IMG/VR virus record: IMGVR_UViG_3300022698_000267
Coordinates: 62,001 to 126,000 of that record
DNA: 64,000 bases
Direction: 5' to 3' (one strand)
Part shown: positions 14,899 to 37,596 of the stretch, piece after piece
Numbering within the stretch: position 1 is the first letter of the stretch
How the letters are laid out: every line of letters begins with the position of its first letter
Program-made: the position numbers and the translations under genes
Notes under the pieces: model-generated
Databases searched by the model: none
What the model saw: the letters and a program-made list of their open reading frames with translations, nothing else
What the model was told of the DNA's origin: nothing

Positions 14899-15156
14899 AT
14901 GAGAGTTAAAACAATTTATAGAAAAAATTTAAAAATGTCGGTTGGTAAGATAGCAGCTCAGGTTGCACATGCTGTTATTGGTTTAGGAATAACTGATCCT
15001 CTTTGTACGATAGTTGTGCTTGGTGTAAGTGATAAGAAGTTCTTTGAAATAACAACGGAAAAGGAGAATGTTTACATTCATAATGACTTTGGTTATACAG
15101 AAGTTAAAGAAGGAGAATTCACCTGTGCTGCATGGGTAGAGGAAGGAGTTTATTGA
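14899..15156 (+). CDS. pth2: Peptidyl-tRNA hydrolase type 2-like protein
   Basis: RKNLKMSVGKIAAQVAHA signature, IVVLGV, and DFGYTEV..G..T (variant of DAGxTqi..GxxT); shorter than cellular Pth2. Confidence 0.75.
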   Translation: MRVKTIYRKNLKMSVGKIAAQVAHAVIGLGITDPLCTIVVLGVSDKKFFEITTEKENVYIHNDFGYTEVKEGEFTCAAWVEEGVY

Positions 15157-15157
15157 A

Positions 15158-17013
15158 ATGGACATATTACCGGTTTCACACGGTGACAGAGATTCAAAAT
15201 TACCGCATTATGCAGTTGTTGACTTGGACAAGTTTCCGGAAGGATCCACTTCTATGTCGGTATTTTGGAAAGTTCCTTTTATAAAACGTGTAAAATTGTT
15301 GTTTACCGGCAACTTGGAAACCAGTTTCCAAGCTAGTTCAGTTCCAAGCATGAGGATTGATACATAAAATGAGAACTTACTACATAGGATTTAATGACTA
15401 TTTCCATACAGCATCAATTCATTTGAGTGAAGTTTCAACTGGTTTGTATTACCTTTACATGCTTACAATGTGGATTTGTGATAAGATTCCAAGTATTCCA
15501 TTTCCAAAATGTATTCCCTGGAAGAGTTCAGAAGGTTGGATGTCAATGAATGAATGGTTTGGTGATTTACAACAATGGTTTCATATGGTTGTTTGTGAAT
15601 CTGTTGCTAATTTTTCTTTTAAACATACCAAGTCCATTATAATTCCTTTACCCTATGGATATTTAGAAGAGTTATTTCCTGAATACTGTCAACATAGTTC
15701 AGAATGGGATGATGACGATAGAATGTTTCGACAGCTATCTAAAGAACTATCTTGGAAACATACAGATGAATTCAAACAATTTTTGAAGAAACTTGGTTAT
15801 GAACACATCAAACAATTATGCGATTCACAAGTTTCTTGGTACGAACGAAAGATGAAAGGATCTTAATGAAAGACTATGAAATGAAGCAATGTAAACTTCG
15901 AAGGGGTGATGTCATCACCACTACTTGGATACCTATTAAATTTGCAATCAAAGGAAAATTTCTAAAATTAAAAGATGAAGGAATATGGACCAATGGTTGG
16001 CAGGTTATATCAGTATATGGACCAACGAAACTGTACAGTGATGTTAAAGAAAGAAGTCAGGAGTACAAACATAATCGTTCTATAACCGATATTTAGATTC
16101 TAAATTCTTAGAAAATACTAATATTAATTATAGTTTGCTAGAATACAAGGAATATGATGATGACTGAAGAAGAACTTATTCTATTGGCCCAAATACGAAA
16201 AAAGGTAAAAGAAAAGCCAGATTTTATCAATGTCATAATGGCTACGGCAACTCAAGGAGTGGTTGATGCAGTGGATCAATATCGTGAGATGGCAGCTGAT
16301 ATGGAAACTCTTGCTTCAACGGCTATATTCATGGCAGGACAAAAAAGAGTTACAAAGAAAACCAAAGAGAAATTTGAACAATTAGCTTTATCCAAATTGA
16401 CTAAGTATGAAGACAAAACTTTCTTTAAATGGGATTGGGCTTTGAAGGATAAAGAATGTTCGAAGGAAGAGTAAAATGTTTGCAAAAGTTTCTACATTTG
16501 AAGAACAGTACGAACAGCTTTCTCAAAAATACAGAGGACTTCGAAAAGAAGATTTAGAGGAATTAAATCCTTCGTATTCTTGTGTTCTATGTAAAAAGTT
16601 TGCAGTGTGTGGAAGGATAGGTCGTGCTTGTTTTGAAGCTGAACCAATGACAGAAGAACAATTTTCTTTGACTTACAATTTCGAGGGGTTTTAATGTGGA
16701 TATACAAGACAAAATAGAGCAATGGCTTGATAGAAACGTGCCTAGATGGACGAAAGAACAATTTAAAGAGCTTGTTTCATTGTTTCGTAGTTGTGAGTCT
16801 AGGACTAAAATAAGAATTTCTGGTCCTATAGTTAAAGAAGAAACTCTGGCTGATATTCTGTTAAATTTGGCTGACTGTTTTCAGAAAGCAGGTGGTGCGA
16901 TTCCATCGCTGGAAGTTCTTAAAGATCAAACAGCATGGGAATTCATTCGTATTATTGCACCTAATGAAATTCGTTTTCATGTAAAGGAAAAGGATCAAGA
17001 AGATAACCAGTAA
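15158..17013 (+). CDS. Run of small hypothetical genes
   Basis: Six closely spaced + ORFs; no recognisable motifs. Confidence 0.55.
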
Positions 17014-17073
17014 TGATCCAGACATTTAAATGTGGTGGATGAATTCACTATGAAAAATAATAAGGAGCATGTT

Positions 17074-17973
17074 ATGGAACTGACAGTTTATGGTTGCAGG
17101 GGCAGCATTCCAACACCGTCAACAAAGGAACATAGCACAATTATATATGGAGGAGACACGACTTGTTTTAAAGTCTCTTTCGAAGGTCTCAAAACTCACC
17201 TTATTCTCGATTGTGGTTCCGGAATGCGTCAATTGGGAAATGATTATATTCCTAGTCATGTTCTACAAGGCAATCCAGTACAAGCAGTCATTTGTTTGAC
17301 TCATTTTCATCACGATCATATTCAGGGAATTCCTTTCTTCGCCCCACTGTATATGAAGCAGAATCATTTCCTTTTTATTGGTCCTGTTTTCGATGGAATT
17401 ATTGGTGAGACAAGGAAACAAGTGCAGGATTATCTGCGACATGAACAACTGCCTCCATTTTTTCCTGTGTATCATGATTGCATGCCCTCCCAGAAAAAAT
17501 ATTTGGATGTTATTCCTGGTGAACAAGTTTTGATTTCACCAGATCTTATGGATTCATTTGATTTCTCATCTTTTCATGATAAAGTCGAGATTACAACCTT
17601 TGCTTTGAATCATCCGAATGGGGCTTGTGGTTATCGAGTAGAGTATCGTGGAAAGGTCATTTGTTTCTGTGGTGATCATGAACATTTAGGCTCTCCTTAT
17701 GTGCTATTTGAAAAATACTGTCAAGATTCTGATCTTTTGGTTATGGATGCTGCATATACTGAAGAGGAGTATATGAATTCAAACAATCCTAAGCAGGGAT
17801 GGGGACATGGAACAATTGGTAGTTGTATTGCTGAAGGGGAGAAATTAAATGCGAAGCAAGTTATGCTTTCACATCATGATCCTTTACATGATGATGTATT
17901 TCTTGCTAATGCTGAGGATAAACTTCCAGAAAATTTCTTCTTTGCAAAACAAGGAATGGTAATAGACATATGA
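17074..17973 (+). CDS. MBL-fold metallo-hydrolase (RNase Z / cyclic-nucleotide phosphodiesterase-like)
   Basis: GCRGSIP, LDCGSG, THFHHDHIQG, HP..ACGYR, GDHE, WGH, SHHDP; start at ATG 17074 with SD AAGGAG. Confidence 0.9.
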   Translation: MELTVYGCRGSIPTPSTKEHSTIIYGGDTTCFKVSFEGLKTHLILDCGSGMRQLGNDYIPSHVLQGNPVQAVICLTHFHHDHIQGIPFFAPLYMKQNHFLFIGPVFDGIIGETRKQVQDYLRHEQLPPFFPVYHDCMPSQKKYLDVIPGEQVLISPDLMDSFDFSSFHDKVEITTFALNHPNGACGYRVEYRGKVICFCGDHEHLGSPYVLFEKYCQDSDLLVMDAAYTEEEYMNSNNPKQGWGHGTIGSCIAEGEKLNAKQVMLSHHDPLHDDVFLANAEDKLPENFFFAKQGMVIDI

Positions 17974-19105
17974 GAGGGCGATATCCACAACTTTTTCCAA
18001 AATTAGAAGATTTATGGTTTCAAATTGCCGTCGTTTACCTAATCTTGGTAGCTTTTGTTTTTATTCTTTTCTTTAGTCTTTCATATGGTTACCGGGCCTA
18101 TCGAACGAAGAAATTCACTGGTAAAGATTGTGATTGGAAAGGCAGGCTTAAAAAGCGTTTCAAATTATCTAAGTTCAGATTCGAATGGGGCAGATGGTGT
18201 TATATCATTCATCCTATTGAAGGTGGAACACATATAACTTGGTGGGAATGGGAGAAGTAAAAGGAGGATACAATGTTTATCGATAATCGAGAAAATCTTA
18301 GAAAAAATATTGAATTGATTCAACGGAGAATGTGTTCTTACGATAATTTTTCATTTGATCCAGAATGTGAACCACCCAGATTTTGTGATTGTAAGTACGG
18401 TGCTAGTGGACGTGGAGAACAAACAGGTTGTCCTGAATTGCGTTGTATGTTGGTTCTTCTTGAAAATATGACGGATGAAGAGTTCTCAGAACTTGTTAAC
18501 AGAGCAAATCCACATATTATATTGAAGGAGTCAGACGATGAAACTTGAAGAATGTCCAGAATGTGAAAGTAGAGTTTTGAATAGGAGATGGTGTTCAGGT
18601 CGTAGATTACAACAATTCTGTGAAACTTGTGGATGGGAGGGTGAAAAAGAAATTCCAGAACAACGAGAAATAGAAACCACCAAAAGAGTAATTGTGAATC
18701 ATCATGGTGGTTTTCAATATACCATTTATGACAAGTATGGACATACTTATATGTATTCTAAATCTTTTGTTGAAAAAGCATTGGCAATAGAGGAATTAGA
18801 AAAGGATTTAAAAATAGGTGAAAATAAAGATTATGGACCTTTTACAGCAGTTCTATGGCCTAGATTTGTAGAGGTACATGGAGAAATTTTTACCAAGACA
18901 GTTCCAAAACCAATTGTGAGAGTACCTCCTCAACCTTACTTTTCTTGCGAAAGAATGAAATTTTGCAATGATAGAAATAGTTCGAATTGTAATGAAGAAT
19001 GTGTCGATTATGTCAAGAATACATATTGATAGATTCTTTGGGTTGAAAGAAATCGGAGAAAGATGCTACATGTCCTGGCTTCATAGACAATGTTCGAGGA
19101 GATAA

Positions 19106-19402
19106 ATGTTGAATAGGCGAGATTTTATAAGAAAGACCATTATAGCTTTGTTAAGTCTTCCTTTTATCACTTTACTTTCAAAGAAAAATGTAAAATTTCA
19201 TACAATAGATGAGAATCTTTCTGTGGGTTTTCCAGAAGCAGAAGGAACTTATTCAATAAGTACTTGGGTAAAACCAGTTAATGGAGATTGGAAACCTATT
19301 GATTTGAAATTTCTATCTGAAAAGAAGAAGACTTATATTCTTCAAAAACTCCTTAAATTCAAAGGACATGTGGATTCTATTACTGTATGGAGGGAGGTAT
19401 AG
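19106..19402 (+). CDS. Protein with twin-arginine (Tat)-like signal
   Basis: MLNRRDFIRK followed by hydrophobic TIIALLSLPFITLL. Confidence 0.55.
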   Translation: MLNRRDFIRKTIIALLSLPFITLLSKKNVKFHTIDENLSVGFPEAEGTYSISTWVKPVNGDWKPIDLKFLSEKKKTYILQKLLKFKGHVDSITVWREV

Positions 19403-19932: not shown

Positions 19933-20505
19933 ATGAGAGAGCAATTACCACAATTTGATCTTGGAGCACATATCAATATCCCTAAAGATAAACAAATTTT
20001 TACTGAAGAAGATCTGCCGGCCATCATCCTTACCAATCCGAAGTATCCTCATAATGTTGGAGCTGCTGTTCGTGGAGCATCATGTTATGGTGCTAAAACA
20101 GTAATTTTTACTGGAGATAGACTCCTTACTAGTCTAGCCTTGGTTTCTAAAACCAAGAAGGGTTGGCGACTTCCAAGAGAGGAGCGAATGAAGGGATACA
20201 AAGACGTCAGAATTTTCAATGATGACAAACCATTCAATCGATTTCCAGCAGATACCAGTTTCGTAGCCATTGAGGTTAAACCAAATTCCGAATGGCTCCC
20301 GAATTTTGCACATCCAAATAAAGCAGTTTACATTTTCGGTCCTGAGGATGGTTCAATACCATCAGTTTATTTGCGTCATTGTCATCGATTTGTCATGATT
20401 CCAACTAAGCATTGTTTGAATCTTGCTGTTGCAGTGAATACTGTTCTATACCAAAGGAATTGTTCTTTCGGTGTTGTAACAGCGGATGATATCGATATGA
20501 TCTAA
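19933..20505 (+). CDS. SpoU/TrmH family RNA 2'-O-methyltransferase
   Basis: NPKYPHNVGAAVR, YIFGPEDGSI, IPTKHCLNLAVA SPOUT motifs. Confidence 0.9.
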   Translation: MREQLPQFDLGAHINIPKDKQIFTEEDLPAIILTNPKYPHNVGAAVRGASCYGAKTVIFTGDRLLTSLALVSKTKKGWRLPREERMKGYKDVRIFNDDKPFNRFPADTSFVAIEVKPNSEWLPNFAHPNKAVYIFGPEDGSIPSVYLRHCHRFVMIPTKHCLNLAVAVNTVLYQRNCSFGVVTADDIDMI

Positions 20506-20519: not shown

Positions 20520-21695
20520 ATGGACAATACAATCGATGTTTGTTTTACCTTTGATACTACTGGATCAATGTACCCTTGTCTAACACAGTTGCGACGATAT
20601 CTTAGTGAGACCTGTGAGCAATTATTTAAAGACATACCTGACCTTCGGATAGCATTCATTGCCCATGGCGACTATGATGATGCACCGTACACGTATGTAA
20701 CCAAGGTCTTTAACTTTTCCAGAGACAAGAATAAGATTGTCAATTTTGTTCGTACAGTTGGTCCGACGGATGGATATGACAGACCAGAATGTTACGAGCT
20801 GGTCTTACATAAGGCTAGGACTGAACTTGATTGGCGATCTGGTCGTTCCAAAGTTTTGGTTATGATTGGTGATGATGTTCCTCATGGTCCAGATTACAGG
20901 AAAAATCGTGATCGTATTGACTGGAGGAATGAATTGGGACTTCTTCTTGAAGCACAAATCAATGTTTATGGTGTGCACTGTATGCCTGGAACCAGATGGC
21001 ATTCTAAACCTTTTTATACAGAGATTGCTAAAAAAACTGGAGGGTTTTACCTGACTTTAGATCAATTCTCTTATATTCGTGATTTGGTTATGTCCATTTG
21101 TTATAAGCAGGAAAGTCCTGAGGCTTTGGATCGTTTTGTAGATGAGATTAAAGTTCAAGGTCGTATGAATCGAAATCTTGCTTTTTCAATCAGTGTCATG
21201 ACCGGAGAAGCTACATATTCGGAAGAGGAGGAAGTGTACGAGGCTCCAACATACAAAAGACCTCCAAGAACAAGGAAGTATGCTTTTGAAAAGGATGGAC
21301 TTATACCTGTTCCATCTGGTCGTTTTCAGGTTCTTCCTGTTGATGATGAATGTACAATCAAAAATTTTATTGCTGAGCAGGGTGTATCATATGAAAAGGG
21401 CCGGGGATTTTATGAACTGATAAGACATGGCAGAAAAAGATACAAAGTACAACCATACAAAGAAATTATCCTTATGGACCGTGAATCTGGTGATCTTTTT
21501 ACTGGTGCAGAACCAAGGAAGATGCTGGGTTTACGTCCTTTCATGGCTAGGAGTGATTACAAAGGAGAAGTATACGATACTTTACCTCCTAATCAATTGC
21601 CAAATTATCGGGTATTCATTCAATCGACATCTTATACCAGGAAACTTGTTCCTGGAAGCAGCTTGTTATATGAAGTGGAGGATTGGAAATACTAA
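20520..21695 (+). CDS. vWA domain protein with conserved C-terminal domain
   Basis: FTFDTTGSM MIDAS, GDYDD, ECYE, IGDDVPH; C-terminal GRGFYE...FIQSTS..RKL. Confidence 0.85.
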   Translation: MDNTIDVCFTFDTTGSMYPCLTQLRRYLSETCEQLFKDIPDLRIAFIAHGDYDDAPYTYVTKVFNFSRDKNKIVNFVRTVGPTDGYDRPECYELVLHKARTELDWRSGRSKVLVMIGDDVPHGPDYRKNRDRIDWRNELGLLLEAQINVYGVHCMPGTRWHSKPFYTEIAKKTGGFYLTLDQFSYIRDLVMSICYKQESPEALDRFVDEIKVQGRMNRNLAFSISVMTGEATYSEEEEVYEAPTYKRPPRTRKYAFEKDGLIPVPSGRFQVLPVDDECTIKNFIAEQGVSYEKGRGFYELIRHGRKRYKVQPYKEIILMDRESGDLFTGAEPRKMLGLRPFMARSDYKGEVYDTLPPNQLPNYRVFIQSTSYTRKLVPGSSLLYEVEDWKY

Positions 21696-25924: not shown

Positions 25925-27244
25925 ATGAAACAAGTGGCAAAGACTTTAAAGGAAATGAAAGATGATTCAGTAATGGGTCAGGTTCTTGATCGGACAATGC
26001 TTCTAAGTGATGATGTGATCGATGAAATTTTGGGTTGGTGGTCATTCGATCTGTTGAAAAGAAAAGCCGGCTTGGCATTGGACGGAATTGCTTATGGATT
26101 GGATTTATCCACTGTTCTATATGAATTTGCAAAAAGGAAAATGGTTGTAAATTTTCCAACGTATCATAGTATGAGAGGATCTACCATTACGGAAGGACAG
26201 AACGTTGTGTCTAAGGAGAACCGTCATGGTCCCATTCTACGGTTGAATGCAAATAAGGATATGTTCTCCTTCAGTGTCTTGACAAATGACGCAAATGTAA
26301 TGGGTACAGACAGTGTTGGAGCATTCAGGTCTTTTGCTGTTGTAGGTTTGACCGGAGAATTCGATGCCACATGGGAAAGAATCGAATTTATGCCTCCAAA
26401 AGATATCAAAGACCATTTTAATGATGAAGGTCTTGGAAATCACATTACCGTTAAGCATTTTGTTCATCCGGCTAGGAGATCACAGGTTTATGGTCAATAT
26501 TATGTGAAAACAAGGGCTGCATATCAAAGGTTGCAAGAGGAACTTGAACACCTGTCATTTTTGAAAAAACGTTTCGAGCATGAGGGAATAGTTCGTGATG
26601 AGGGTGAGAAAAAAGAGTGGCCCAAATCCACTACGGATTACAGCACAACCAAGAAGGTTTCTGTTCCGGCCTTTGAAATGATACTACATATTCCGAATAT
26701 GCTTCCACATCCGGTGGCAAAATTTGTGGGCAAGCAGAAGTCACCCTCACAATGGGAGAAGTTTAAAGGAAAACAACATGCTTCCAGATGGGATGAATGG
26801 GTTGATAAAAGGAATAAGTTGATGGATGCCTTTTCTGACGTTCCTTGGTTTCCAGAGCTTGATGCAAATGACCTGGATTTTATTGAAGATCGCATTAAAT
26901 ACTTGCGATATGATTTGCTTCCTACCCTGAATTTTTTGCTTCGGTCAGCAGAGCTTGCCTTTTGCAAATATGGTAAGGGTGCAACTGCTGACCCAGTAAT
27001 GCCTCCTTGGATTAAAACAACAAGGGTCAGGGATGCATGGAATCCTGGTTTTACTATACCAGCACTTGATCGTGAAATTGAAGGCTTCAAATCTACAAAA
27101 CCAAAAGTTTCGTGGGATAGATTAGTTCTATTTCAGGATAAGATTGGTGAGTACGGAACCTCATTGCTGAAGAGGACTTTTGAGAAGAATCAAACAGTGA
27201 ATGTCAATTACGATTTCACATACCCAGAATGGTTTCGGGGTTAA
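25925..27244 (+). CDS. 439-aa hypothetical protein
   Basis: Long ORF with SD AGGAGG; no motif recognised. Confidence 0.8.
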   Translation: MKQVAKTLKEMKDDSVMGQVLDRTMLLSDDVIDEILGWWSFDLLKRKAGLALDGIAYGLDLSTVLYEFAKRKMVVNFPTYHSMRGSTITEGQNVVSKENRHGPILRLNANKDMFSFSVLTNDANVMGTDSVGAFRSFAVVGLTGEFDATWERIEFMPPKDIKDHFNDEGLGNHITVKHFVHPARRSQVYGQYYVKTRAAYQRLQEELEHLSFLKKRFEHEGIVRDEGEKKEWPKSTTDYSTTKKVSVPAFEMILHIPNMLPHPVAKFVGKQKSPSQWEKFKGKQHASRWDEWVDKRNKLMDAFSDVPWFPELDANDLDFIEDRIKYLRYDLLPTLNFLLRSAELAFCKYGKGATADPVMPPWIKTTRVRDAWNPGFTIPALDREIEGFKSTKPKVSWDRLVLFQDKIGEYGTSLLKRTFEKNQTVNVNYDFTYPEWFRG

Positions 27245-29795: not shown

Positions 29796-30779
29796 TTGTG
29801 GAGAATGATAATGATAATAAATGAAAAACTAACAGTTAATGAAAAAATAATAGTGTATATGATCTTTGGTTCTCATCTATATGGAACTAACACACCTGAT
29901 TCTGACACAGATTACAAAGGGGTTTTCTTTCCAACTAAAGAACAGATATTTCTTGGAAGAATCCCAAAATCTTATTCCACCAGCCCAAAGAAAACAGGAC
30001 AGGGACAAAAAAATACCTCTGATGATACTGATATAGAAATCTATTCTCTCCACTACTTTTTAAAATTAGCATGTGAAGGACAAACTGTTGCTATAGACAT
30101 GCTTCACGCTCCAAGTCATATGCTTTTGGAATCTTCTGAGATTTGGGATTTCATTGTAGGAAATAAACATAGATTCTACAGCAGAGATATGGATTCTTTT
30201 ATTCGCTATGCTAGGAAACAGGCGGCTAAATATGGAATAAAAGGTAGTCGTTTAGCCGTAACCAAAGAATTTATAGATTTACTAAATTCTGTTCCAGATG
30301 ATACAAGACTTTCTGAGTTATGGAATAAACTTCCAGATGGTGAACATTGTTATTTTGTGGAAGATGACCCAAAAGGAATTGCTCAATATCAAATCTGTGG
30401 AAAAAAGTTTCAAGCTACTAGTAAAGCATTGTATGTTAAGAAAATAGTTCAAAGTTTCTATGATCGTTATGGTGAACGTGCTAAACAGGCTGAATTAAAT
30501 CAAGGGATTGATTGGAAAGCAGTTTCACATGCTTTAAGAGCCGCTTATCAAACCAGGCAAATTTTAACAGAAGGAACCATAACTTATCCTCTAAAAGAAT
30601 CTGGTTTTCTACGGGATGTGAAGCAGGGTTATTTTCACTACACTAAATACGTTGGTCCTGTTTTAGAAGCTCTTATGGATGAACTTGAAGAGCTTTCTAA
30701 AAATAGTGATCTTCCTGCAACAGCCGATAGAAAGTACTGGGATACCTTCCTCATAGATCTCATCGATGCAACTCTTTAA
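29796..30779 (+). CDS. Pol-beta superfamily nucleotidyltransferase (T4 NrdC.11 / RlaP-like)
   Basis: FGSHLYGTNTPDSDTDYKGV and DWKAVSHALR. Confidence 0.85.
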   Translation: MWRMIMIINEKLTVNEKIIVYMIFGSHLYGTNTPDSDTDYKGVFFPTKEQIFLGRIPKSYSTSPKKTGQGQKNTSDDTDIEIYSLHYFLKLACEGQTVAIDMLHAPSHMLLESSEIWDFIVGNKHRFYSRDMDSFIRYARKQAAKYGIKGSRLAVTKEFIDLLNSVPDDTRLSELWNKLPDGEHCYFVEDDPKGIAQYQICGKKFQATSKALYVKKIVQSFYDRYGERAKQAELNQGIDWKAVSHALRAAYQTRQILTEGTITYPLKESGFLRDVKQGYFHYTKYVGPVLEALMDELEELSKNSDLPATADRKYWDTFLIDLIDATL

Positions 30780-31136: not shown

Positions 31137-31688
31137 ATGTTGCTACGTTTAATAAAATCAATTTTAGATTACTTAAAGGAAAGCATAAATCTTATAACCT
31201 CTCATTTCATGCAACACCCTCATTCTATTGAAAGGAGTATATCATTGTCTAGAAATATTAACAAAGCAGGTTTGGAATTGATAAAAGATTTCGAGGGTTT
31301 TTATGCCGAAGCTTATATTTGTCCAGCTGGAGTTTGGACTATTGGATATGGACATACCAAAGATGTGCATAAAGGACAATGGGTTTCAAGACAACAGGCA
31401 GAGGAACTTCTACAAGAGGATCTGGAGGAAGCACAAGAGGCAGTAGAAAGGTATATAGAGGTTCCTTTGACAGACAATCAGTTTGCTGCATTGGTAAGTT
31501 TTACCTTTAATCTTGGTGCTGGAAATTTAAAGACCAGCACACTCCTGAGAAAATTAAATGCAGGTGATTATGATGCTGTCCCTTCCGAATTGGCTCGTTG
31601 GATTAAGGCTGGTGGAAAAACGCTGACGGGATTAGTCAGACGACGTGCTGCCGAAACTGAACTGTTTATGCAACCAGATGAAGTTTAG
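31137..31688 (+). CDS. Endolysin, GH24 phage lysozyme
   Basis: IKDFEG..AYICPAGVWTIGYGHT, QFAALVSFTFNLG, GLVRRRAAE; alternative in-frame TTG at 31245 with SD AAGGAG. Confidence 0.95.
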   Translation: MLLRLIKSILDYLKESINLITSHFMQHPHSIERSISLSRNINKAGLELIKDFEGFYAEAYICPAGVWTIGYGHTKDVHKGQWVSRQQAEELLQEDLEEAQEAVERYIEVPLTDNQFAALVSFTFNLGAGNLKTSTLLRKLNAGDYDAVPSELARWIKAGGKTLTGLVRRRAAETELFMQPDEV

Positions 31689-31714
31689 CCAATTCTATAA
31701 GTGAAGCAACTAGG

Positions 31715-31816
31715 ATGAAAAAATTAAGCAAATTAAAAACTCTACTGTTAGTTCTCAGCTACATTTTACCGATTATAATAGCTTTGGCTCTTATTTATTA
31801 TATCAAACATTCTTAA
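31715..31816 (+). CDS. 33-aa single-TM peptide in lysis cluster (not in ORF track)
   Basis: MKKLSKLKTLLLVLSYILPIIIALALIYYIKHS. Confidence 0.45.
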   Translation: MKKLSKLKTLLLVLSYILPIIIALALIYYIKHS

Positions 31817-31870
31817 AAACCTTATTAAAAACTTTAGTAATAATTTAACTTTATTTGCAGGAGGTCGGTC

Positions 31871-32368
31871 ATGAGAAAATTTTTTCTGTTTTTAATCGTT
31901 AGTGCAGTCTTGGCAATGCTTGCCGGATGTGCTGGAACTCCAACACCTTGGAATCAACCTTGTACGATTTATGATGACGTCGGAGCAACTCCGGAAAATA
32001 GTGTGATCGCAAAGTTGATTAAAAATCCTTGCGTTGCCCAAAAAATGCTTGTAACAGCAGCCAAGGCTCCATACCTCTGGAAGAAACAAGAATATATTGA
32101 TATGTTCAATAAATGGGAAACCTACATTGAAGAAATTGTTAGAGGGGGTGTAACATATTCCCAATTACAAACGATTGTTATTGCTCAAGTTTCAAAGTTA
32201 AATGAGGAGGCTGGTGTTGTTCTGCTTATACTATCGGATGGAATTTTTGTTTTCAATGGAGAAACCGCTTTAATTAGTGAAATCGATCAGACACTAATTT
32301 TAATGTCGTTGGAAGATTTGAAAACAAATGTCAATCAGTTGACGTTGATTGGTCGACAGCTGGAATAA
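31871..32368 (+). CDS. Lipoprotein (spanin candidate)
   Basis: Signal peptide with lipobox LAGC; SD AGGAGGT; next to endolysin. Confidence 0.65.
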   Translation: MRKFFLFLIVSAVLAMLAGCAGTPTPWNQPCTIYDDVGATPENSVIAKLIKNPCVAQKMLVTAAKAPYLWKKQEYIDMFNKWETYIEEIVRGGVTYSQLQTIVIAQVSKLNEEAGVVLLILSDGIFVFNGETALISEIDQTLILMSLEDLKTNVNQLTLIGRQLE

Positions 32369-32498: not shown

Positions 32499-32507
32499 TA
32501 CTAAATA
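32499..32507 (+). promoter_or_regulatory. Candidate late promoter TACTAAATA (motif also + at 3883, 10984, 13337, 16116, 22069, 37886)
   Basis: TACTAA(A/T) in AT-rich gaps upstream of operon-leading ORFs, no -35. Confidence 0.55.
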
Positions 32508-32774
32508 ATAGGAATGGAGTGAGAATAATATGAAAGTAAAAAAAGTCAAAGGCTACTTTTACACTTATCGTGGAAATGGATATGGTCCGTTTATTAGTAA
32601 AGAGATTTGTACTGTTGAAATAGTAAATAGAATGTATAGTGATACTTCGGATATTGGAAGGAGTCTACTATTGAAGTACCAAGAAGGTAGATACAAACCT
32701 AGGATTTACTTTGGAACAGTACGTGTCAGTGGAGCTAAAGAGTTACTAAAATCTACATTAAAGGTTGTGCTAAA

Positions 32775-33308
32775 ATGAAATTGATGAGTGAAGGAACAAA
32801 ATCGTATCTGTTTGGATGTCATCATTTTATTCTACATCCTTACTCAGTTTTGAAAGCGTGGAGAAAAGAATATAAATCCTGGCCTACTTGGTGGGAACTA
32901 ATTTGCATTCTCCTTCATGATATTGGGATTTGTGGAAGGGAATATTTATCTGATGGTAAAGCCAAACGAGGGCACTGGGAAAAGGGAGCAGATTTATCTT
33001 TTAATGTAATTCTTCTCTTGGCTCCACGAAGAAGGCAATTTTATCTGGCTTATAGGGCTTATATATTCTGTGCTGGACATTGTCCAAGTGAGTCTGATTA
33101 TACAATGAGTAGATTGTATAGAGCAGATAAAAAATCTTGGTTGGAAGCTCCAATGTGGTGGTTAAGGAGTAATGCCAGAATAGAAAAGTTTGTAATCTCT
33201 GCAGAAGAATGGGTTGCAATTGTTAGAAAACAATTAGAACATAAAGGTTACAATGGAGATGGTGCACATTCAATGTATATGAATATCAGGAGTTTAAAGA
33301 ATGAGTGA
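32775..33308 (+). CDS. HD-domain-like protein
   Basis: H..LLHDIG, HWEKG, GH, ADK pattern. Confidence 0.55.
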   Translation: MKLMSEGTKSYLFGCHHFILHPYSVLKAWRKEYKSWPTWWELICILLHDIGICGREYLSDGKAKRGHWEKGADLSFNVILLLAPRRRQFYLAYRAYIFCAGHCPSESDYTMSRLYRADKKSWLEAPMWWLRSNARIEKFVISAEEWVAIVRKQLEHKGYNGDGAHSMYMNIRSLKNE

Positions 33309-33530
33309 TGTAGAAATCGATTTGGAACTTATACGAAAAAGTCCTGCAGCGTATTTAGTTTCAGATGGTGAAATAGAAGAGTGGTTACCAAAATCTCAGG
33401 TAGAAGTAGATTCTAATGACGATTTAGAAGAAGGACAAACTTATCTTTTCATTATTCCTGAATGGTTGGCATTTAACAAGGGTTTCGTATAATTTCTTAA
33501 AGAAGTGCACAGCAATAAAATCCTTTCTTT

Positions 33531-33866
33531 TTATATCTTTATCTTCATAACTTTCATTTTAATTCTAAGACCATAACCATCTTCAACATCATCAGGTAGC
33601 CATACTTGCACTTCTTGTTTAATTTCTTGAATGATATTTTTTTCATCTACAACAACAGTAACTCTCCATCTTTGGGAATCAACAGTTAGTGCAGTACCAG
33701 GTGTAATTACTCGAATCATATTAGGTCGTAGAGCATGAACAAAACCCAAAGCAGTAGAATCCCATTCTAATCCTTTTAGAAATTCTAATACTGGAATACT
33801 AGTACTACCAAAACGAATACTTTCTGGCATATAGGTTTTCCCTTGCATACTTCTATAATCTTTCAT
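33531..33866 (-). CDS. Hypothetical protein with potato-inhibitor-I / I78-like motif
   Basis: RVITPGTALTVDSQRWRVTVVVDEKNIIQEI. Confidence 0.4.
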   Translation of the reverse strand: MKDYRSMQGKTYMPESIRFGSTSIPVLEFLKGLEWDSTALGFVHALRPNMIRVITPGTALTVDSQRWRVTVVVDEKNIIQEIKQEVQVWLPDDVEDGYGLRIKMKVMKIKI

Positions 33867-34580
33867 TTACTTCTCTCCTTTATTTATCACAAACCATTTG
33901 CTATTTTTACCTCTTTTATCATTTTTTCAAGGGCAAACACATCAACTCGGCCTCCCCAATCGGCAATGGTTTGTTTATCTTCTTTTGAAACATATCCACT
34001 TACAATAGATGCTCGTAATTGTAATTCCCCATTCACTTCTACAGTACCAATACCTAAAGTTCCTCTGGCTCCACTAACCCATGTAACATCTTTAAGAATT
34101 GTAGACATTACCACCTCCTTATGAAGAAATAATTAAAATTGGTTTTACATCATGAATAGGATTGTTGCAGAATTTTCCTTTTTCCTTAGTCCAACCACAT
34201 GAACATTTTTCCCAACAATCGCACTCCTCCATTTTAGCACCACACTTTACACAATGAACACTTTTATCAATTAATTTATCAAGCAATGTATCCATTTTAA
34301 TCCTTTTTAGGGTATAGAACAGATTGTTGCAAGGCCAGTGAATTCTCTAGCCATTTTTCAAGCATCAACCACTCAGTATTTTTGCCTTTTCTTTTTACAA
34401 CTTGCATTGTAGAGCGACATAGTTCATTTGCTGATTTGAGAGTTTTTTCAAGTTTATCTATTCTTTCCTGCATTAATTCAATGTACTCACATCTTGAATT
34501 AATTTTAGTTGTTTCTGAACGCATATTTTTGATAATAGTTTCTGTATTTTCTTTAGACACTTCCATTTTCAAATCATCCT

Positions 34581-35030
34581 TTAACTCAAAGTTCTACGTT
34601 TTTTAGATCTTTCACCCATGAATTCCCGTTTGTGTTTCTTTAGAAGACGAATAACATTTCCTTTAGTAGTTTCACATTTCTCAGCTATTTGTTTTATTGT
34701 CATATCCCGCATTTTTTTAGGAGGTATCTGCAAAAAGTTCTCTTGCTTTACTCCAGGATGTATAGAAAATCTTCTTCCACCCCTTGGTTTCTGTACAAAG
34801 ATGTTTATCTCTTTTAGATACCGTGTAACTCCATGTGGTGAAAGTCCCAATTTTCTTGCTAGAGGTCTTACATAAAACTCGCATTCTTTATAGAGATCAG
34901 CAATCCATTCCTCTGCCGTTTTGTAATTGGTTTTATTCCAAGTGTTGTAAGTGTCTTTAAAACTTTCCCAATCTATACGAGTATACACATTAATCCTCCG
35001 TTTTAGTAGTAACTGGTTCCCAACAATCAC
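34581..35030 (-). CDS. Putative double HTH DNA-binding protein
   Basis: VRPLARKLGLSPHGVTRYL and TIKQIAEKCETTKGNVIRLL. Confidence 0.55.
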   Translation of the reverse strand: MIVGNQLLLKRRINVYTRIDWESFKDTYNTWNKTNYKTAEEWIADLYKECEFYVRPLARKLGLSPHGVTRYLKEINIFVQKPRGGRRFSIHPGVKQENFLQIPPKKMRDMTIKQIAEKCETTKGNVIRLLKKHKREFMGERSKKRRTLS

Positions 35031-35212
35031 ATTGCTTTACAGGAGCAAATTGGTCGTCTCGTTGAACAATATATCCCATTTTTCTTTTGATTGGAGCAGG
35101 TAGTGGATAACGACAAATACCATCTCTAGTAAATTTTTCGGGGTTTAATTCGGAAATAACTGTTTTCCATTCTGACCAGATTGGTTCCCATTTACAAGTC
35201 AGACACTTAAAC

Positions 35213-36022
35213 TCAATTTGATTCTTCGATGATTGGGTCTTCTCCATTGAAAATAACTCCTACTCTATTGGTTACTTTAGAAAATACAGGCATATCTAGT
35301 CTTCTAACTTCTGTTCTTTCAATTTCTAGATCAGGATTCTCTCTTGCTTCATGTTTTGGTGGAAGTTTTTCAATTTCTTTAGTATCAAACTTCCTAAGGA
35401 CTGTTCTTTTTTGGAAGTACATTCCTCGTTTAAAATTAGCAGGATAATCATTCCAGTTCACACCTTTTTCAAATAACATTTCCTGCATATCTTTTCCATT
35501 TTTCTTGTGTAATTGTTTGTGGGAATAGTATACTCTTGCTGCCATTGAAATACTATTTTTGGTAGCATCAAATTCTCTCCACAAAATAACATTGGCTGCT
35601 TCTTGTTTAGTCGGGACTTCCCATGCTCTACAATCGAATAGAGCAACTCTGTGTGCTTTTTCAGGAATCATCTTACTTAAATAAGCATTAAAGGTTGCAG
35701 TGGTCACAGAAGTTAAAACAGAAACCATTTTCAATATTTTTCTATCAAAAAATATTTGGCTTTTCAAATTGTCACTGTAATATACCAGACTAATTTCATC
35801 TGATTGTGTATGACCAATACAGGCATTAGTTTCTTTAACAAGAGTATCAACAACAATACCCATTAATTCTGATAGTCTTACATCATAAGGACGTTCTAAT
35901 CCTTTTGTAAATTGACTGAAATTTTTACCATCAATTCGTACACAGATTGGAACCATAGGAAGAAACTTTCGTTTACTTTCACGTCCTTCATACATTTTCA
36001 TTCTGTCGCCTAAATCATCCAT
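35213..36022 (-). CDS. thg1: Thg1-like 3'-5' nucleotidyltransferase (tRNA-His guanylyltransferase family), intact active site
   Basis: DRMKMYE, RIDGKNF, QSDEISL, FDCR, WR..DA.KNSI, GVNWNDYP..FKRG. Confidence 0.93.
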   Translation of the reverse strand: MDDLGDRMKMYEGRESKRKFLPMVPICVRIDGKNFSQFTKGLERPYDVRLSELMGIVVDTLVKETNACIGHTQSDEISLVYYSDNLKSQIFFDRKILKMVSVLTSVTTATFNAYLSKMIPEKAHRVALFDCRAWEVPTKQEAANVILWREFDATKNSISMAARVYYSHKQLHKKNGKDMQEMLFEKGVNWNDYPANFKRGMYFQKRTVLRKFDTKEIEKLPPKHEARENPDLEIERTEVRRLDMPVFSKVTNRVGVIFNGEDPIIEESN

Positions 36023-36036
36023 TTATCATTTCCCTC

Positions 36037-36855
36037 TTATTTTGTATCAACAATTGGGTCTTCTCCATTGAAAATAACTCCTACTCTATTGATTACTTCG
36101 GAAAATGGAGGCATGTCTAATCTTCTGACTTCCGTTCTTTCAAATTTCAGATCAGGATCTTTTCTTGCTATGTGTTTTGGTGGAAGATCTGTAATTTCCT
36201 CTTTATTGAACTTTTTGGAAACTTTTCTTCTTTGGAAAAAAGTTCCTCGTTGAAAACTAACAGGATAATCGTTTTTCCAATCCATATCTTTTTCAAGTAA
36301 CATTGCTAATCTATCTTCTTCATTCTTTCCCAACAATTGTTTATGTGAGTAATATTGTCTTGCTGCTATTGAAATACTTTTTTCAATTGCGACAGTTTCT
36401 TCCCATAGAATAATATTGGCTGCCTCTTCCAATGTTGGGACTCCCCAAGCTTTGCAAGAAAACACAGCAACACGGTGTGCTTTTTCTGGTATTACTTCTG
36501 GAAGGTATCTATTAAATGTTGCAGTAGTTACAGAAGAGATGACAGAAATCATTTTCATTATTTTTCTATCGAAAAATATTTGACCCTTCAAATCGTCATT
36601 GTAATAAATCAGATTGATTTCATTTGATTGTATATACCCAATGCAAGCATTAGTTTCTTTGACAATGGCTTCAGTAACAATCCACATCAAATCTCGCATT
36701 CGTGTATCGAAGGGTTTATCTAATCCTTTTGTAACTCGCTTCCAATCTATACCAGTAACTTGTATACAAATTGGAATCAAGGGCATAAATCTTCGATTAC
36801 TTTCACTACCTTTGTAAAGTCTCGTTCTTTCAAATAAATCGTCTAATTTGTTCAT
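36037..36855 (-). CDS. Thg1-like paralog lacking catalytic residues
   Basis: Collinear with 35213..36022 but QVTG for RIDG, QSNE for QSDE, FSCK for FDCR. Confidence 0.88.
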   Translation of the reverse strand: MNKLDDLFERTRLYKGSESNRRFMPLIPICIQVTGIDWKRVTKGLDKPFDTRMRDLMWIVTEAIVKETNACIGYIQSNEINLIYYNDDLKGQIFFDRKIMKMISVISSVTTATFNRYLPEVIPEKAHRVAVFSCKAWGVPTLEEAANIILWEETVAIEKSISIAARQYYSHKQLLGKNEEDRLAMLLEKDMDWKNDYPVSFQRGTFFQRRKVSKKFNKEEITDLPPKHIARKDPDLKFERTEVRRLDMPPFSEVINRVGVIFNGEDPIVDTK

Positions 36856-37110
36856 TTTAATCTCCTATAAAATGTCTTTATTCCAGCCGGGTTTTGTGTT
36901 ATCAAGTCTTTTATACCAATCTTGATTGGCTAAGGTTATTGATGTACTCTTATTTTCATTCTGATCTTTCATGAAAGTCAAAGCTCGTAGAACGTAAAGA
37001 TCTTTTTCTAGATATTCTTGTGCTACGTCAAGATGACAATGCTTTTTTACTACTTCCCTCATTGTCATAGAAACTAATAGTCCGTCAATGATTTGTGAAG
37101 CATCCATTTA

Positions 37111-37596
37111 TCATTTCCTTTCTTTCCAATCAGTTATTTTAAAGGCTCTATCTTCGGTTATGTGAACAGAAAATAATTTATCAAAACCTTCATTCATACT
37201 TGGTATTTCTAATCTTTGATAGCTGGCTATTACAGCTACTTTTGGAAGATTTTTATCAAGTCGTTTTTCATTTCTTTTTATACAGATATCTAAATTTGCC
37301 TGAAAATAAAAACCAATAATCGGCATTTTTACTTTCTTCAATAAGGGAAAGTATTTTTCTCTTTCTTTTTTAGAGGGATTGGTATTATCGATAACCATTG
37401 GTTGTTCTGTTTCAATACAAAATTGAATTAATTTTGATTCTCGATTTCTGGTTTTCAACATATCCAGATTGACTCTTATATGCGTATCTGCAAAGTTCTT
37501 CTGATAGAAGGTTGATTTTCCGGTGGCTGGGATTCCAATAAAAATTATGTTATTCCTTTTCCAAGAAGCTGTTGACTTGTTTGAACTGCTTTCCAT
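37111..37596 (-). CDS. P-loop polynucleotide-kinase-like protein (AAA_33 type)
   Basis: GIPATGKST Walker A, VNLDML, VIDNTN...R, RN..R, EGFD. Confidence 0.88.
   Translation of the reverse strand: MESSSNKSTASWKRNNIIFIGIPATGKSTFYQKNFADTHIRVNLDMLKTRNRESKLIQFCIETEQPMVIDNTNPSKKEREKYFPLLKKVKMPIIGFYFQANLDICIKRNEKRLDKNLPKVAVIASYQRLEIPSMNEGFDKLFSVHITEDRAFKITDWKERK

What the first reader, a model, noticed from the sequence alone, without database searches (positions are those of the whole stretch)
14899..37596. Dispersed tRNA-repair / translation-rescue toolkit
Seen in one window: Pth2-type hydrolase (minimal, 85 aa), RNase Z-fold MBL, SpoU/TrmH methylase, RlaP/NrdC.11-like nucleotidyltransferase, PNK-like kinase, two Thg1 genes, HAD and calcineurin-like phosphatases, Ro60-like protein and a tRNA-like RNA. 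Known: phages counter anticodon nucleases with end-healing and sealing enzymes. Inference: a multi-layer counter-defence against tRNA-targeting immunity using 5' re-synthesis, 2'-O-methyl protection and decoy RNA.
Basis: partly seen in the sequence, partly recalled or inferred. Interest (0 to 1): 0.65.

Follow-up and report, generated by a model that had tools for sequence, protein, structure and literature searches.

The report
Jumbo-phage tRNA repair genes, one dead paralog
A 273-kb phage carries a scattered set of RNA-end repair and tRNA-maintenance genes of a kind already described for jumbo phages; its one unusual part is a small operon joining an RNA 5'-kinase to a working reverse (3'-5') tRNA polymerase and a tandem copy that has lost its catalytic residues.

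Summary
The window is bases 62,001-126,000 of a 273,563-bp IMG/VR phage. Most listed genes are real:
- a conserved 85-aa mini-Pth2
- an MBL whose nearest solved folds are RNase Z
- an intact SpoU methylase
- an RlaP/NrdC.11 nucleotidyltransferase
- a PNK-type kinase
- two Thg1-like (TLP) genes

The two metallophosphoesterases and two weak HAD-like proteins lie outside the stated coordinates.

Two items fail. The genome has no TROVE/Ro60 domain, only a phage vWA protein. No tRNA-like RNA was found in the window.

Elsewhere the genome has 20 tRNA calls and an HD-RtcB pair. It has no Rnl1/Rnl2 ligase and no CCA-adding enzyme.

Only 79aa-kinase-80aa-TLPb-TLPa is an operon; the rest are scattered among about 60 unrelated small ORFs. 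Reading such genes as counter-defence against tRNA nucleases was published for jumbo phages in 2021 (PMC7824862).

Two points are new:
- TLPb is a lineage-specific, fast-evolving tandem copy. It has lost E12, R29, D31, D75 and the WRExDAxKN motif but keeps the fold-defining residues. It is unique among 66 homologs and 86 phage loci.
- The kinase sits with the TLPs in a genome that has no ATP-dependent ligase.

The "2'-O-methyl protection" and "decoy RNA" layers have no support.

The parts
14899..15156 (+). Minimal Pth2-type peptidyl-tRNA hydrolase (85 aa)
   Evidence: PTH2 at 33.6 bits. Conserved 80-85-aa family of 83 homologs with K17, Q21, H24, D63, G65 and T75 invariant. Profile against PDB Pth2 at 1.4e-9. 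AF2 pLDDT 93.6; top ten fold hits are all Pth2, TMq 0.64-0.75.
17032..17973 (+). Metallo-beta-lactamase-fold phosphodiesterase of the RNase Z/ElaC/YhfI/PhnP clade; substrate open
   Evidence: Lactamase_B_2. HxHxDH and the other metal ligands are invariant. Profile against RNase Z 1y44 at 2.9e-18. AF2 pLDDT 90.6; VIA Z 28.4 to 2cbn, 26 to YhfI, 20 to Apyc1. RNase Z equivalog score 49.5 against a cut-off of 293. Bacterial homologs lie next to GAF-SpoIIE genes.
19933..20505 (+). SpoU-class (SPOUT) RNA 2'-O-methyltransferase; target unknown
   Evidence: SpoU_methylase at 58.5 bits. Motifs N-x-G-x3-R, FGPEDG and IP..LNLAVA are present. Only weak, sub-threshold matches to TrmJ, RlmB and TrmL. Found in only 2 GenBank phage records.
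20520..21695 (+).
   Evidence: VWA at residues 6-189. Nearest Atlas clusters are viral vWA proteins. No TROVE domain in the genome.
29796..30779 (+). RlaP/NrdC.11 Pol-beta nucleotidyltransferase (adds nucleotides to RNA 3' ends)
   Evidence: RlaP at 50.3 bits. phrog_388 at 7.9e-94. 46% identity to NrdC.11 of T4-like phages. GS...DxD motif present. Family biochemistry: bioRxiv 10.64898/2025.12.29.696909.
35213..36022 (-). TLPa: Thg1-like 3'-5' RNA polymerase with an intact active site
   Evidence: Thg1 at 101.9 bits. BtTLP 4kgk at 1.3e-41, against eukaryotic Thg1 at 1e-7 to 1e-13. RIDG, SDE and WREFDATKNS motifs are intact.
36037..36855 (-). TLPb: tandem paralog of TLPa with a degenerate active site (putative pseudoenzyme subunit)
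   Evidence: 62% identical to TLPa. QVTG, SNE and WEETVAIEKS replace the catalytic motifs, uniquely among 66 homologs. 13 of 42 conserved columns are lost, against a mean of 0.72 in the other homologs. Sister to TLPa on a branch 2.6 times longer. Heterodimer model scores 0.86 against 0.00 for the best control.
36865..37107 (-). 80-aa ORF between the kinase and TLPb; unknown
   Evidence: Tightly packed in the operon, 3-nt and 9-nt from its neighbours. No Pfam or PHROG match.
37111..37596 (-). Stand-alone PNK-type polynucleotide 5'-kinase (161 aa, no phosphatase domain)
   Evidence: AAA_33 at 46.5 bits. Mammalian PNKP kinase domain at 5.5e-10; CthPnkp kinase domain (own knowledge of PDB 4gp6) at 2e-3. 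PSTK and PNK NCBIfam matches. GIPATGKST, NLD and VIDNTN motifs present.
37598..37837 (-). 79-aa ORF at the head of the operon; unknown
   Evidence: Ends 1 nt before the kinase start. Only one faint PHROG hit.
3910..4623 (+). Calcineurin-like metallophosphoesterase (outside the finding's range)
   Evidence: Metallophos at 35.9 bits. phrog_1649 at 1.4e-26.
6153..6632 (+). Second small metallophosphoesterase
   Evidence: Metallophos at 16.8 bits. phrog_547 at 5.7e-39.
13738..14160 (+). HAD-motif small protein (DFDGV)
   Evidence: Motif scan. phrog_1238 at 3.9e-14. No Pfam hit.
49077..49622 (-). HAD-motif small protein (DLDDT), faintly like the PNK phosphatase family
   Evidence: Motif scan. HAD_2 at 12-14 bits, below cut-off. 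phrog_420 at 4.5e-10 and phrog_415 'polynucleotide kinase' at 4e-4.

Best explanation
The window is an accessory-gene region of a 273-kb jumbo phage. It holds real but physically scattered RNA-end repair and translation-maintenance genes of the kind already catalogued for jumbo phages.

The only co-transcribed unit is 79aa-kinase-80aa-TLPb-TLPa on the minus strand. The proposed mechanism below is inferred, not shown.
1. A tRNA that has lost nucleotides from its 5' end and carries a 5'-OH is phosphorylated by the PNK-type kinase.
2. The TLP activates the 5'-phosphate with ATP or GTP. It then refills the acceptor stem 3'-to-5', using the 3' strand as template.
3. TLPb, which has lost its metal- and NTP-binding residues but keeps its fold, serves as a non-catalytic subunit in mixed TLPa/TLPb oligomers.

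Other genes would act alongside this unit:
- RlaP restores one or two 3' nucleotides.
- RtcB, 121 kb away beside an HD phosphohydrolase, seals 3'-P/5'-OH breaks.
- The mini-Pth2 frees peptidyl-tRNA from stalled complexes.
- The phage's own tRNA genes (20 ARAGORN calls) replace lost host tRNAs.

The SpoU methylase, the RNase Z-like MBL and the small phosphatases may act on RNA, but they cannot be assigned to this pathway.
For: - Gene identities and intact catalytic motifs.
- The operon is tightly packed.
- TLPa is much closer to the 5'-repair enzyme BtTLP (1.3e-41) than to eukaryotic Thg1.
- TLPs need a 5'-monophosphate, which is then adenylylated (PMC3701042).
- The genome has RtcB but no Rnl1 or Rnl2. 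RtcB joins 5'-OH ends without prior phosphorylation (own knowledge), so the kinase has no ligase to serve. In jumbo phages, PNK presence normally tracks the ATP-grasp ligases (PMC7824862).
- The phage has no tRNA-His gene. The 19 tRNAs of the array have paired acceptor stems, which argues against G-1 addition or 5' editing of phage tRNAs.
- In 44 other phage records, ligase, kinase and RlaP genes lie within 3 kb of the TLP 10 times against 2.3 expected (P about 1.5e-4).
- Explicit repair islands exist in L065, L087, L083 and L008.
- TLPb's losses fall mainly on charged active-site residues while Pro, Gly and aromatic residues are kept.
- The heterodimer model scores 0.86 against a best control of 0.00. 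That mark was reached by 51 of 78 solved complexes and 2 of 108 mismatched pairs. The runs agree in at least 99% of contacts and the partner's pLDDT is at least 88.
Against: - No activity, expression or host is known, and no sequencing run was listed.
- The kinase-TLP adjacency is seen with this kinase only in this genome. It has 0 of 86 phmmer matches in other TLP loci. Pfam-level kinase proximity alone is not significant (2 against 0.72 expected within 3 kb).
- The distance statistics are not corrected for relatedness among the records.
- TLPb is a singleton, so it could simply be a decaying duplicate.
- The complex score may only reflect memory of solved Thg1 homodimers.
- No host defence is known to me that trims tRNA 5' ends (own knowledge).
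- Most of the listed genes are dispersed with no linkage to one another.
Confidence: 0.55

Rival explanations
1. Thematic over-grouping. The listed genes are independent accessory genes in a hypervariable region. Only a few act on tRNA (TLPa, RlaP, Pth2 and RtcB elsewhere). The MBL degrades cyclic or other nucleotides, in an anti-signalling role like Apyc1. The SpoU methylates rRNA or phage RNA. The HAD and MPE proteins belong to nucleotide metabolism. TLPb is a dying duplicate.
For: - The genes are spread over 23 kb among about 60 unrelated ORFs, including a lysozyme at 31137-31688.
- Bacterial MBL homologs lie in a STAS-Mla-GAF/SpoIIE row in 3 of 3 look-ups.
- The MBL has a weak match to a cyclic-nucleotide phosphodiesterase model, and its fold matches Apyc1 at Z 20.
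- The SpoU protein reaches no tRNA-specific equivalog.
- The HAD-like proteins match only weakly.
- TLPb is a singleton.
Against: - The MBL's closest solved folds and profile hits are RNase Z, not Apyc1.
- TLPb keeps a full-length open frame, 62% identity and 29 of 42 conserved positions, which is not the pattern of a random pseudogene.
- TLP genes cluster with repair genes in other phages.
Confidence: 0.3
2. The TLP pair matures tRNAs rather than repairing damage. It would add G-1 to tRNA-His, or edit mismatched 5' ends of phage tRNAs, as the TLPs of amoebal mitochondria do.
For: - The Thg1 family's classic role is G-1 addition.
- The phage encodes many tRNAs.
- One odd 76-nt tRNA-like gene at genome 60124-60199 has two acceptor-stem mismatches.
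Against: - The phage has no tRNA-His gene.
- The 19 array tRNAs have paired acceptor stems.
- TLPa groups with the repair-type BtTLP.
- Bacterial tRNA-His gets its G-1 from the gene itself (PMC3061083 abstract).
- Phage TLPs lie next to ligase, RlaP and kinase genes.
Confidence: 0.1
3. The kinase is not an RNA 5'-kinase. It phosphorylates a nucleotide, a small molecule or a tRNA-bound residue (as PSTK does), and its position next to the TLPs is fortuitous.
For: - AAA_33 is a broad kinase family.
- The best NCBIfam hit is PSTK, at 47.8 bits and far below its cut-off.
- No homolog of this kinase lies beside other TLPs.
Against: - PDB hits to the PNKP and CthPnkp kinase domains cover residues 15-144.
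- The VIDNTN motif is shared with mammalian PNKP (motif identity from own knowledge).
- PHROG matches are to 'polynucleotide kinase' and 'RNA ligase' families.
- The gene lies 3 nt from the next ORF in the same operon as the TLPs.
Confidence: 0.15

Closest known systems
Jumbo-phage RNA-repair and ribosome-rescue gene complement (Iyer, Anantharaman, Krishnan, Burroughs, Aravind 2021, PMC7824862, section 3.4.9)
   Same: The same gene types are read the same way: phage tRNAs, RtcB, PNK, HAD, calcineurin and HD phosphatases, RlaP, Thg1 and PTH2, all as answers to host attacks on tRNA.
   Different: - This genome has a PNK kinase without any ATP-grasp ligase.
- It has no CCA-adding enzyme and no TROVE protein.
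- It has a tandem TLP pair with one dead copy.
- It has a SpoU methylase and an RNase Z-like MBL, neither of which that paper mentions ('RNase Z' occurs 0 times; the single 'SpoU' hit is inside 'Spounavirinae' in the reference list).
Phage T4 Pnkp plus Rnl1 healing and sealing of PrrC-cut tRNA-Lys
   Same: A phage-encoded 5'-kinase acting on broken tRNA as counter-defence (own knowledge; reviewed in PMC2610378 abstract).
   Different: - The kinase here has no fused 3'-phosphatase (PNK3P absent).
- There is no Rnl1 or Rnl2.
- The kinase is linked to TLPs rather than to a ligase.
Bacterial and archaeal Thg1-like proteins (BtTLP, MaTLP): tRNA 5'-end repair
   Same: TLPa matches BtTLP at 1.3e-41 with D31, D75, E76, R29 and E12 conserved. 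The expected chemistry is templated 3'-5' addition to 5'-truncated tRNA.
   Different: It is phage-encoded, duplicated in tandem with a catalytically degenerate copy, and next to a PNK kinase. No activity has been tested.
Bacterial Pnkp/Hen1 RNA repair (2'-O-methylation makes the repaired junction immune to re-cleavage)
   Different: Hen1 is a Rossmann-fold methylase that works with Pnkp (own knowledge). The gene here is a SPOUT/SpoU enzyme, 17 kb from the kinase and not linked to it. No Hen1 search was run.
Rsr (Ro60)/Y RNA/RtcB ribonucleoprotein repair systems
   Same: RtcB is present in the genome, and a vWA protein is present in the window.
   Different: There is no TROVE domain and no Y RNA or tRNA-like RNA. 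The vWA protein has a different architecture and lies far from RtcB.

Membership tests
Thg1/TLP (PF04446): TLPa, 35213-36022(-) | Thg1 palm domain scoring above the Pfam cut-off | tested here: met
   101.9 bits against a cut-off of 29.2; phrog_4717 at 1.3e-81.
Thg1/TLP: TLPa | Metal-binding carboxylates and NTP-binding residues (BtTLP D30, D75, E76, R28, E12) | tested here: met
   RIDG, SDE and WREFDATKNS are all present. Residue roles are taken from PMC3701042.
Thg1/TLP: TLPa | 3'-5' nucleotide addition activity | not testable with these tools
   Needs an enzyme assay.
Thg1/TLP: TLPb, 36037-36855(-) | Thg1 palm domain scoring above the Pfam cut-off | tested here: met
   73.9 bits; 4kgk at 5.9e-25.
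Thg1/TLP: TLPb | Metal-binding carboxylates and NTP-binding residues | tested here: not met
   E12K, R29Q, D31T, D75N, R149E, D152V and N156K. It is the only one of 66 homologs with these changes.
PTH2 (PF01981): 14899-15156 | Pth2 fold and conserved N-terminal K..Q..H and D-x-G-x-T motifs | tested here: met
   Top ten fold hits are all Pth2. K17, Q21, H24, D63 and G65 are invariant in the family; T67 is at least 90% conserved.
PTH2 | Full-length match to the family model or equivalog cut-off | tested here: not met
   The Pfam match covers only profile positions 6-28 of 115. NCBIfam gives 34.1 bits against a cut-off of 126. The protein is about 30 aa shorter than Pth2.
PTH2 | Peptidyl-tRNA hydrolase activity | not testable with these tools
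   Needs an assay, or complementation of a pth mutant.
RNase Z (tRNA 3' endonuclease): 17032-17973 | MBL fold with HxHxDH and nearest structural neighbours RNase Z | tested here: met
   H91, H93, D95 and H96 are invariant. 2cbn at Z 28.4 and 4gcw at Z 27.8. 1y44 at 2.9e-18.
RNase Z | Equivalog-level sequence match | tested here: not met
   TIGR02651 gives 49.5 bits against a cut-off of 292.95, over the N-terminal half only.
RNase Z | Flexible arm (exosite) that holds the tRNA | tested here: inconclusive
   Residues 119-185 of the model form an insert with one low-confidence loop. It was not compared with the RNase Z arm residue by residue.
SpoU/TrmH 2'-O-methyltransferases: 19933-20505 | SpoU_methylase domain above cut-off with the three SPOUT motifs | tested here: met
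   58.5 bits against a cut-off of 29.7; motifs read.
SpoU/TrmH | Assignment to a tRNA-specific subfamily (TrmH, TrmJ or TrmL) | tested here: not met
   All matches score 17-32 bits against cut-offs of 160-366.
RlaP (PF10127): 29796-30779 | RlaP domain above cut-off and the Pol-beta GS...DxD motif | tested here: met
   50.3 bits against a cut-off of 23; phrog_388; motif read.
RlaP | Genomic association with an RNA ligase | tested here: not met
   The genome has no Rnl1 or Rnl2. RtcB lies about 128 kb away.
Polynucleotide 5'-kinase (PNK/PNKP/Pnkp kinase domain): 37111-37596 | P-loop, catalytic Asp and similarity to solved PNK kinase domains | tested here: met
T4-type healing-and-sealing system | 3'-phosphatase domain and ATP-dependent RNA ligase | tested here: not met
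   PNK3P, RNA_ligase and RNA_lig_T4_1 are all absent from the genome.
Ro60/Rsr RNP | TROVE domain protein | tested here: not met
   There were 0 matches at E<=1 in the genome, while the control genomes were detected.
Ro60/Rsr RNP | Y RNA or tRNA-like partner RNA | tested here: not met

The most novel reading that the evidence does not exclude
The operon encodes a ligase-independent tRNA 5'-end repair machine. A dedicated 5'-kinase feeds a heteromeric reverse polymerase built from one catalytic TLP subunit and one pseudoenzyme TLP subunit specialised for holding tRNA. Its presence in a phage would imply a still undescribed host defence that removes nucleotides from tRNA 5' ends and leaves a 5'-OH. 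It would also give bacterial and phage TLPs their first physiological substrate.
Probability: 0.2. Interest if true: 0.7.

Novelty: new variant of a known kind. Interest (0 to 1): 0.4.

Why it matters
What TLP 3'-5' polymerases do in bacteria and phages is still an open question. Their tRNA 5'-repair activity is known in vitro, but no natural source of 5'-truncated tRNA is known (own knowledge).

This locus offers two things to test directly:
- a compact operon pairing a PNK-type kinase with a TLP, in a genome that lacks the ligase such kinases usually serve
- a natural active/dead TLP pair, which can be used to ask how TLP oligomers divide catalysis and tRNA binding between subunits

At least 558 IMG/VR contigs encode a TLP. 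In other phages the gene lies near RNA ligase, RlaP and kinase genes more often than chance predicts. This gives numerical support to the published idea that phage Thg1 genes belong to RNA repair. The rest of the 'toolkit' is ordinary for a jumbo phage.

Tried and rejected
- **Ro60.** The TROVE search of the whole genome was empty. The 439-aa ORF at 25925-27244 has no Pfam, PHROG, NCBIfam or Atlas match.
- **tRNA-like RNA.** ARAGORN and Rfam found nothing. A relaxed ARAGORN candidate at 41438-41515 folds no better than shuffled sequence (z 0.01) and lies in a repeat-rich intergenic gap.
- **Alternative genetic code.** A CUA-anticodon tRNA exists, but TAG ends 83 of 390 ORFs and recoding it gives no clear gain. 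Table 11 was kept.
- **Close relatives of the window.** There is no nucleotide match in GenBank phages. Close-relative patterns for TLPb found nothing in IMG/VR.
- **Kinase next to the TLP elsewhere.** tblastn and phmmer with this kinase found nothing in 86 loci. Longer TLP homologs (313-422 aa) are not kinase fusions.
- **Second TLP copy elsewhere.** None in 86 loci.
- **MBL as Apyc1.** Apyc1 ranks below RNase Z, YhfI and PhnP (Z 20 against 28). The viral fold library gave only generic MBL hits.
- **Promoter and terminator scan of the operon.** No more sites than in shuffled sequence.
- **Sequencing runs.** None was listed.
- **Not done.** The big representative protein search was not used, because family scans had already settled the proteins. 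The host was not identified.

Full report
**Setting.** The window is G000:C1:62001-126000 of a single 273,563-bp IMG/VR virus record, 97% complete by CheckV. GC content is about 36%. A simple ORF tiling under table 11 covers 91% of the genome. TAG ends 83 of 390 ORFs, and recoding any stop codon brings no clear gain, so the standard code was kept. No nucleotide relative exists in GenBank phages.

**Checking the observation.** Pfam, PHROG, NCBIfam, PDB sequence searches and two structure predictions gave the following.

1. *Mini-Pth2, 14899-15156(+).*
   - The 85-aa protein matches PTH2 only over profile positions 6-28 (33.6 bits).
   - It belongs to a well-conserved family of 80-85-aa proteins: 83 homologs at 51-96% identity.
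   - K17, Q21, H24, D63, G65 and T75 are invariant.
   - The family profile aligns to archaeal Pth2 structures over nearly its whole length (1rlk, 1.4e-9).
   - The AF2 model (pLDDT 93.6) finds only Pth2 structures in its top ten (TMq 0.64-0.75).
   - The "minimal Pth2" claim is therefore sound.

2. *MBL, 17032-17973(+).*
   - It is a Lactamase_B_2 metallo-hydrolase with an invariant HxHxDH motif.
   - The family profile hits RNase Z best (1y44, 2.9e-18).
   - The AF2 model (pLDDT 90.6) is nearest E. coli and B. subtilis RNase Z (Z 28.4 and 27.8). YhfI and the ElaC homolog follow at Z 26, PhnP-family proteins at 25.5 and Apyc1 at 20.
   - It falls far short of the RNase Z equivalog score (49.5 against 293).
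   - Its bacterial homologs (35-39% identity) sat in a conserved STAS-MlaE-ABC-MlaD-GAF/SpoIIE/HATPase_c_2-MBL row in all three look-ups. That is a signalling context, not a tRNA context.
   - "RNase Z-fold" is right. "RNase Z" is not shown.

3. *SpoU, 19933-20505(+).* This is an intact SpoU-class methylase. It matches no subfamily model above cut-off and occurs in only two GenBank phage records.

4. *RlaP, 29796-30779(+).* This is RlaP/NrdC.11. Members of the family add one or two nucleotides to the 3'-OH of damaged RNA in vitro (bioRxiv 10.64898/2025.12.29.696909).

5. *Kinase, 37111-37596(-).*
   - This is a 161-aa stand-alone PNK-type kinase. It hits the mammalian PNKP kinase domain (5.5e-10) and, more weakly, chains that I recognise as the CthPnkp kinase domain (2e-3).
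   - GIPATGKST, NLD and VIDNTN motifs are present.

6. *Two Thg1-like genes, 35213-36022(-) and 36037-36855(-)*. See below.

7. *Phosphatases.* Two metallophosphoesterases (3910-4623, 6153-6632) and two HAD-motif proteins (13738-14160, 49077-49622) exist. All lie outside the stated coordinates, and the HAD calls rest on motif I plus weak matches.

8. *Ro60.* No TROVE domain occurs anywhere in the genome. The vWA protein at 20520-21695 belongs to a phage vWA family.

9. *tRNA-like RNA.* None was found in the window.

**The rest of the genome.**
- ARAGORN finds 20 tRNAs. One odd 76-nt gene lies at 60124. An array of 19 lies at 127867-143033, starting 1.9 kb after the window. There is no tRNA-His.
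- The 19 array tRNAs have paired acceptor stems and nearly all carry an encoded CCA.
- RtcB is present at 220472-221554, directly after an HD-domain protein.
- Rnl2-type and Rnl1-type ligases, the CCA-adding enzyme and the PNK 3'-phosphatase are absent.

**The one real unit.** On the minus strand, 79aa-kinase-80aa-TLPb-TLPa (37837 to 35213) is packed with gaps of 1-14 nt.

TLPa has every catalytic motif and matches the 5'-repair enzyme BtTLP at 1.3e-41. Eukaryotic Thg1 matches only at 1e-7 to 1e-13.

TLPb shows the pattern of a pseudoenzyme that keeps its fold:
- It is 62% identical to TLPa.
- Among 66 homologs it is the only one in which the three invariant motifs are changed: RxDG to QVTG, SDE to SNE, and WRExDAxKNS to WEETVAIEKS.
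- In BtTLP these positions include the two Mg-binding aspartates, the GTP-binding arginine and E12 (PMC3701042).
- TLPb deviates at 13 of 42 columns that are at least 95% conserved. The other 65 homologs deviate at a mean of 0.72 and a maximum of 5. Most of the lost residues are charged and include the known active-site positions. The Pro, Gly and aromatic positions are kept.
- In a maximum-likelihood tree TLPb is sister to TLPa (UFboot 90) inside a 99%-supported clade. Its branch is 2.6 times as long.
- So it is a lineage-specific tandem duplicate that then evolved quickly. None of 86 other phage TLP loci holds a second copy within 6 kb.

A complex prediction for TLPa with TLPb scored 0.86 against a best control of 0.00. 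That mark was reached by 51 of 78 solved complexes and 2 of 108 mismatched pairs. The runs agree in at least 99% of contacts and the partner's pLDDT is at least 88. The predicted interface is symmetric, using equivalent segments of both chains, as expected for a Thg1-type dimer. Because Thg1 and TLP homo-oligomers are solved, this shows likeness and does not prove that this copy binds.

**Do phage TLPs belong to RNA repair?**
- At least 558 IMG/VR contigs encode a TLP.
- Some carry explicit repair islands:
  - L065: RlaP ... metallophosphoesterase-Rnl2-type ligase ... TLP-AAA_33 kinase
  - L087: TLP-x-ligase ... RlaP-x-kinase
  - L083: TLP near a convergent AAA_33 kinase
  - L008/L009, the closest relative (TLP 70% identical): TLP directly followed by RlaP
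- Over 44 records I compared Pfam positions of RNA_ligase, AAA_33 and RlaP with a uniform expectation:

| Distance from TLP | Gene class | Observed | Expected | P |
|---|---|---|---|---|
| within 3 kb | RNA ligase | 7 of 37 | 1.18 | 2e-4 |
| within 3 kb | AAA_33 kinase | 2 of 28 | 0.72 | 0.16 |
| within 3 kb | RlaP | 1 of 12 | 0.42 | 0.34 |
| within 3 kb | all three | 10 | 2.3 | 1.5e-4 |
| within 6 kb | all three | 14 | 4.6 | 3e-4 |

- These numbers are not corrected for relatedness among the records. The kinase and RlaP are not significant on their own.

**Mechanism (inferred).** TLPs act on a 5'-monophosphate that they first adenylylate. RtcB joins 5'-OH ends directly and needs no kinase (own knowledge). 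In jumbo phages, PNK normally tracks the ATP-grasp ligases, and this genome lacks those ligases. The simplest role for a kinase sitting in the TLP operon is to phosphorylate the 5'-OH of a truncated tRNA so that the TLP can refill the acceptor stem. TLPb would then be a non-catalytic partner. RlaP, HD-RtcB, the mini-Pth2 and the tRNA array fit the published repair-and-rescue scheme. The SpoU methylase, the MBL and the small phosphatases cannot be placed in it.

**Comparison with what is known.** The idea of a dispersed phage toolkit against tRNA-targeting immunity is the explicit subject of section 3.4.9 of Iyer et al. 2021 (PMC7824862). That section lists tRNAs, RtcB and Rnl ligases, PNK, HAD, calcineurin and HD phosphatases, RlaP, the CCA enzyme, Thg1, PTH2 and TROVE. 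So the finding as written is a new member of a known kind. The variant features are the dead TLP paralog and the kinase-TLP linkage without a ligase. I found no paper on either among the searches run, which is not an exhaustive check. The "decoy RNA" has no object in the sequence.

**Limits.** No host, expression data or activity is known. No sequencing run was listed and read laying was not used. No sequence was taken for human.

Noticed in passing
window 40882-41849 (repeats at 41386-41626): A non-coding, purine-rich gap of about 1 kb at a divergent strand switch. It holds three copies of a 71-82-nt direct repeat (80-86% identity) plus A/G-rich short repeats. It may be a promoter or regulatory array. 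It is not tRNA-like.
   Followed up: partly
genome 127867-143033 (starts 1.9 kb after the window end): An array of 19 tRNA genes headed by a tRNA with a CUA anticodon (amber suppressor). TAG nevertheless ends 83 of 390 ORFs, and recoding it does not clearly lengthen ORFs.
   Followed up: partly
genome 60124-60199 (1.8 kb before the window start): A 76-nt 'tRNA-Leu(CAA)' call with no long variable arm, two acceptor-stem mismatches and no CCA. It may be a degenerate or tRNA-like element.
   Followed up: no
window 1571-2581 and 48169-49080: An ARPP-1 domain protein and an ADP-ribosylglycohydrolase. These two domains were linked in ADP-ribose conflict systems by PMC9503650.
   Followed up: partly
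genome 219838-221575 (L004 867-2604): An HD-domain phosphohydrolase (160 aa) lies directly upstream of RtcB. This is a likely healing-and-sealing pair, far from the window.
   Followed up: partly
window 31137-32368: A phage lysozyme (174.8 bits) followed by a 165-aa protein with a lipobox-like signal (LAGC). This part of a lysis cassette lies inside the finding's range and is unrelated to RNA.
   Followed up: no
L094, L095, L096 (bacterial contigs): Bacterial homologs of the window's MBL lie in a conserved row, STAS-MlaE-ABC-MlaD-GAF/SpoIIE/HATPase_c_2-MBL. This suggests a signalling-linked phosphodiesterase family with no published role that I know of.
   Followed up: partly
window 25925-27244: A 439-aa ORF with no match in Pfam, PHROGs, NCBIfam or the ESM Atlas feature search.
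   Followed up: partly
window 44244-45754, 7085-8071, 56459-57502: Other accessory genes: dUTPase, a sigma-70 region-2 protein (343 aa), an SPFH/Band-7 protein and a class-II glutamine amidotransferase.
   Followed up: no
L065 (IMGVR_UViG_3300048597_000634), record 184178-184660: The Rnl2-type RNA ligase frame in this TLP repair island contains one in-frame TAG. In table 11 the ORF is called as only 259 aa. This could be a broken gene or stop-codon readthrough.
   Followed up: no
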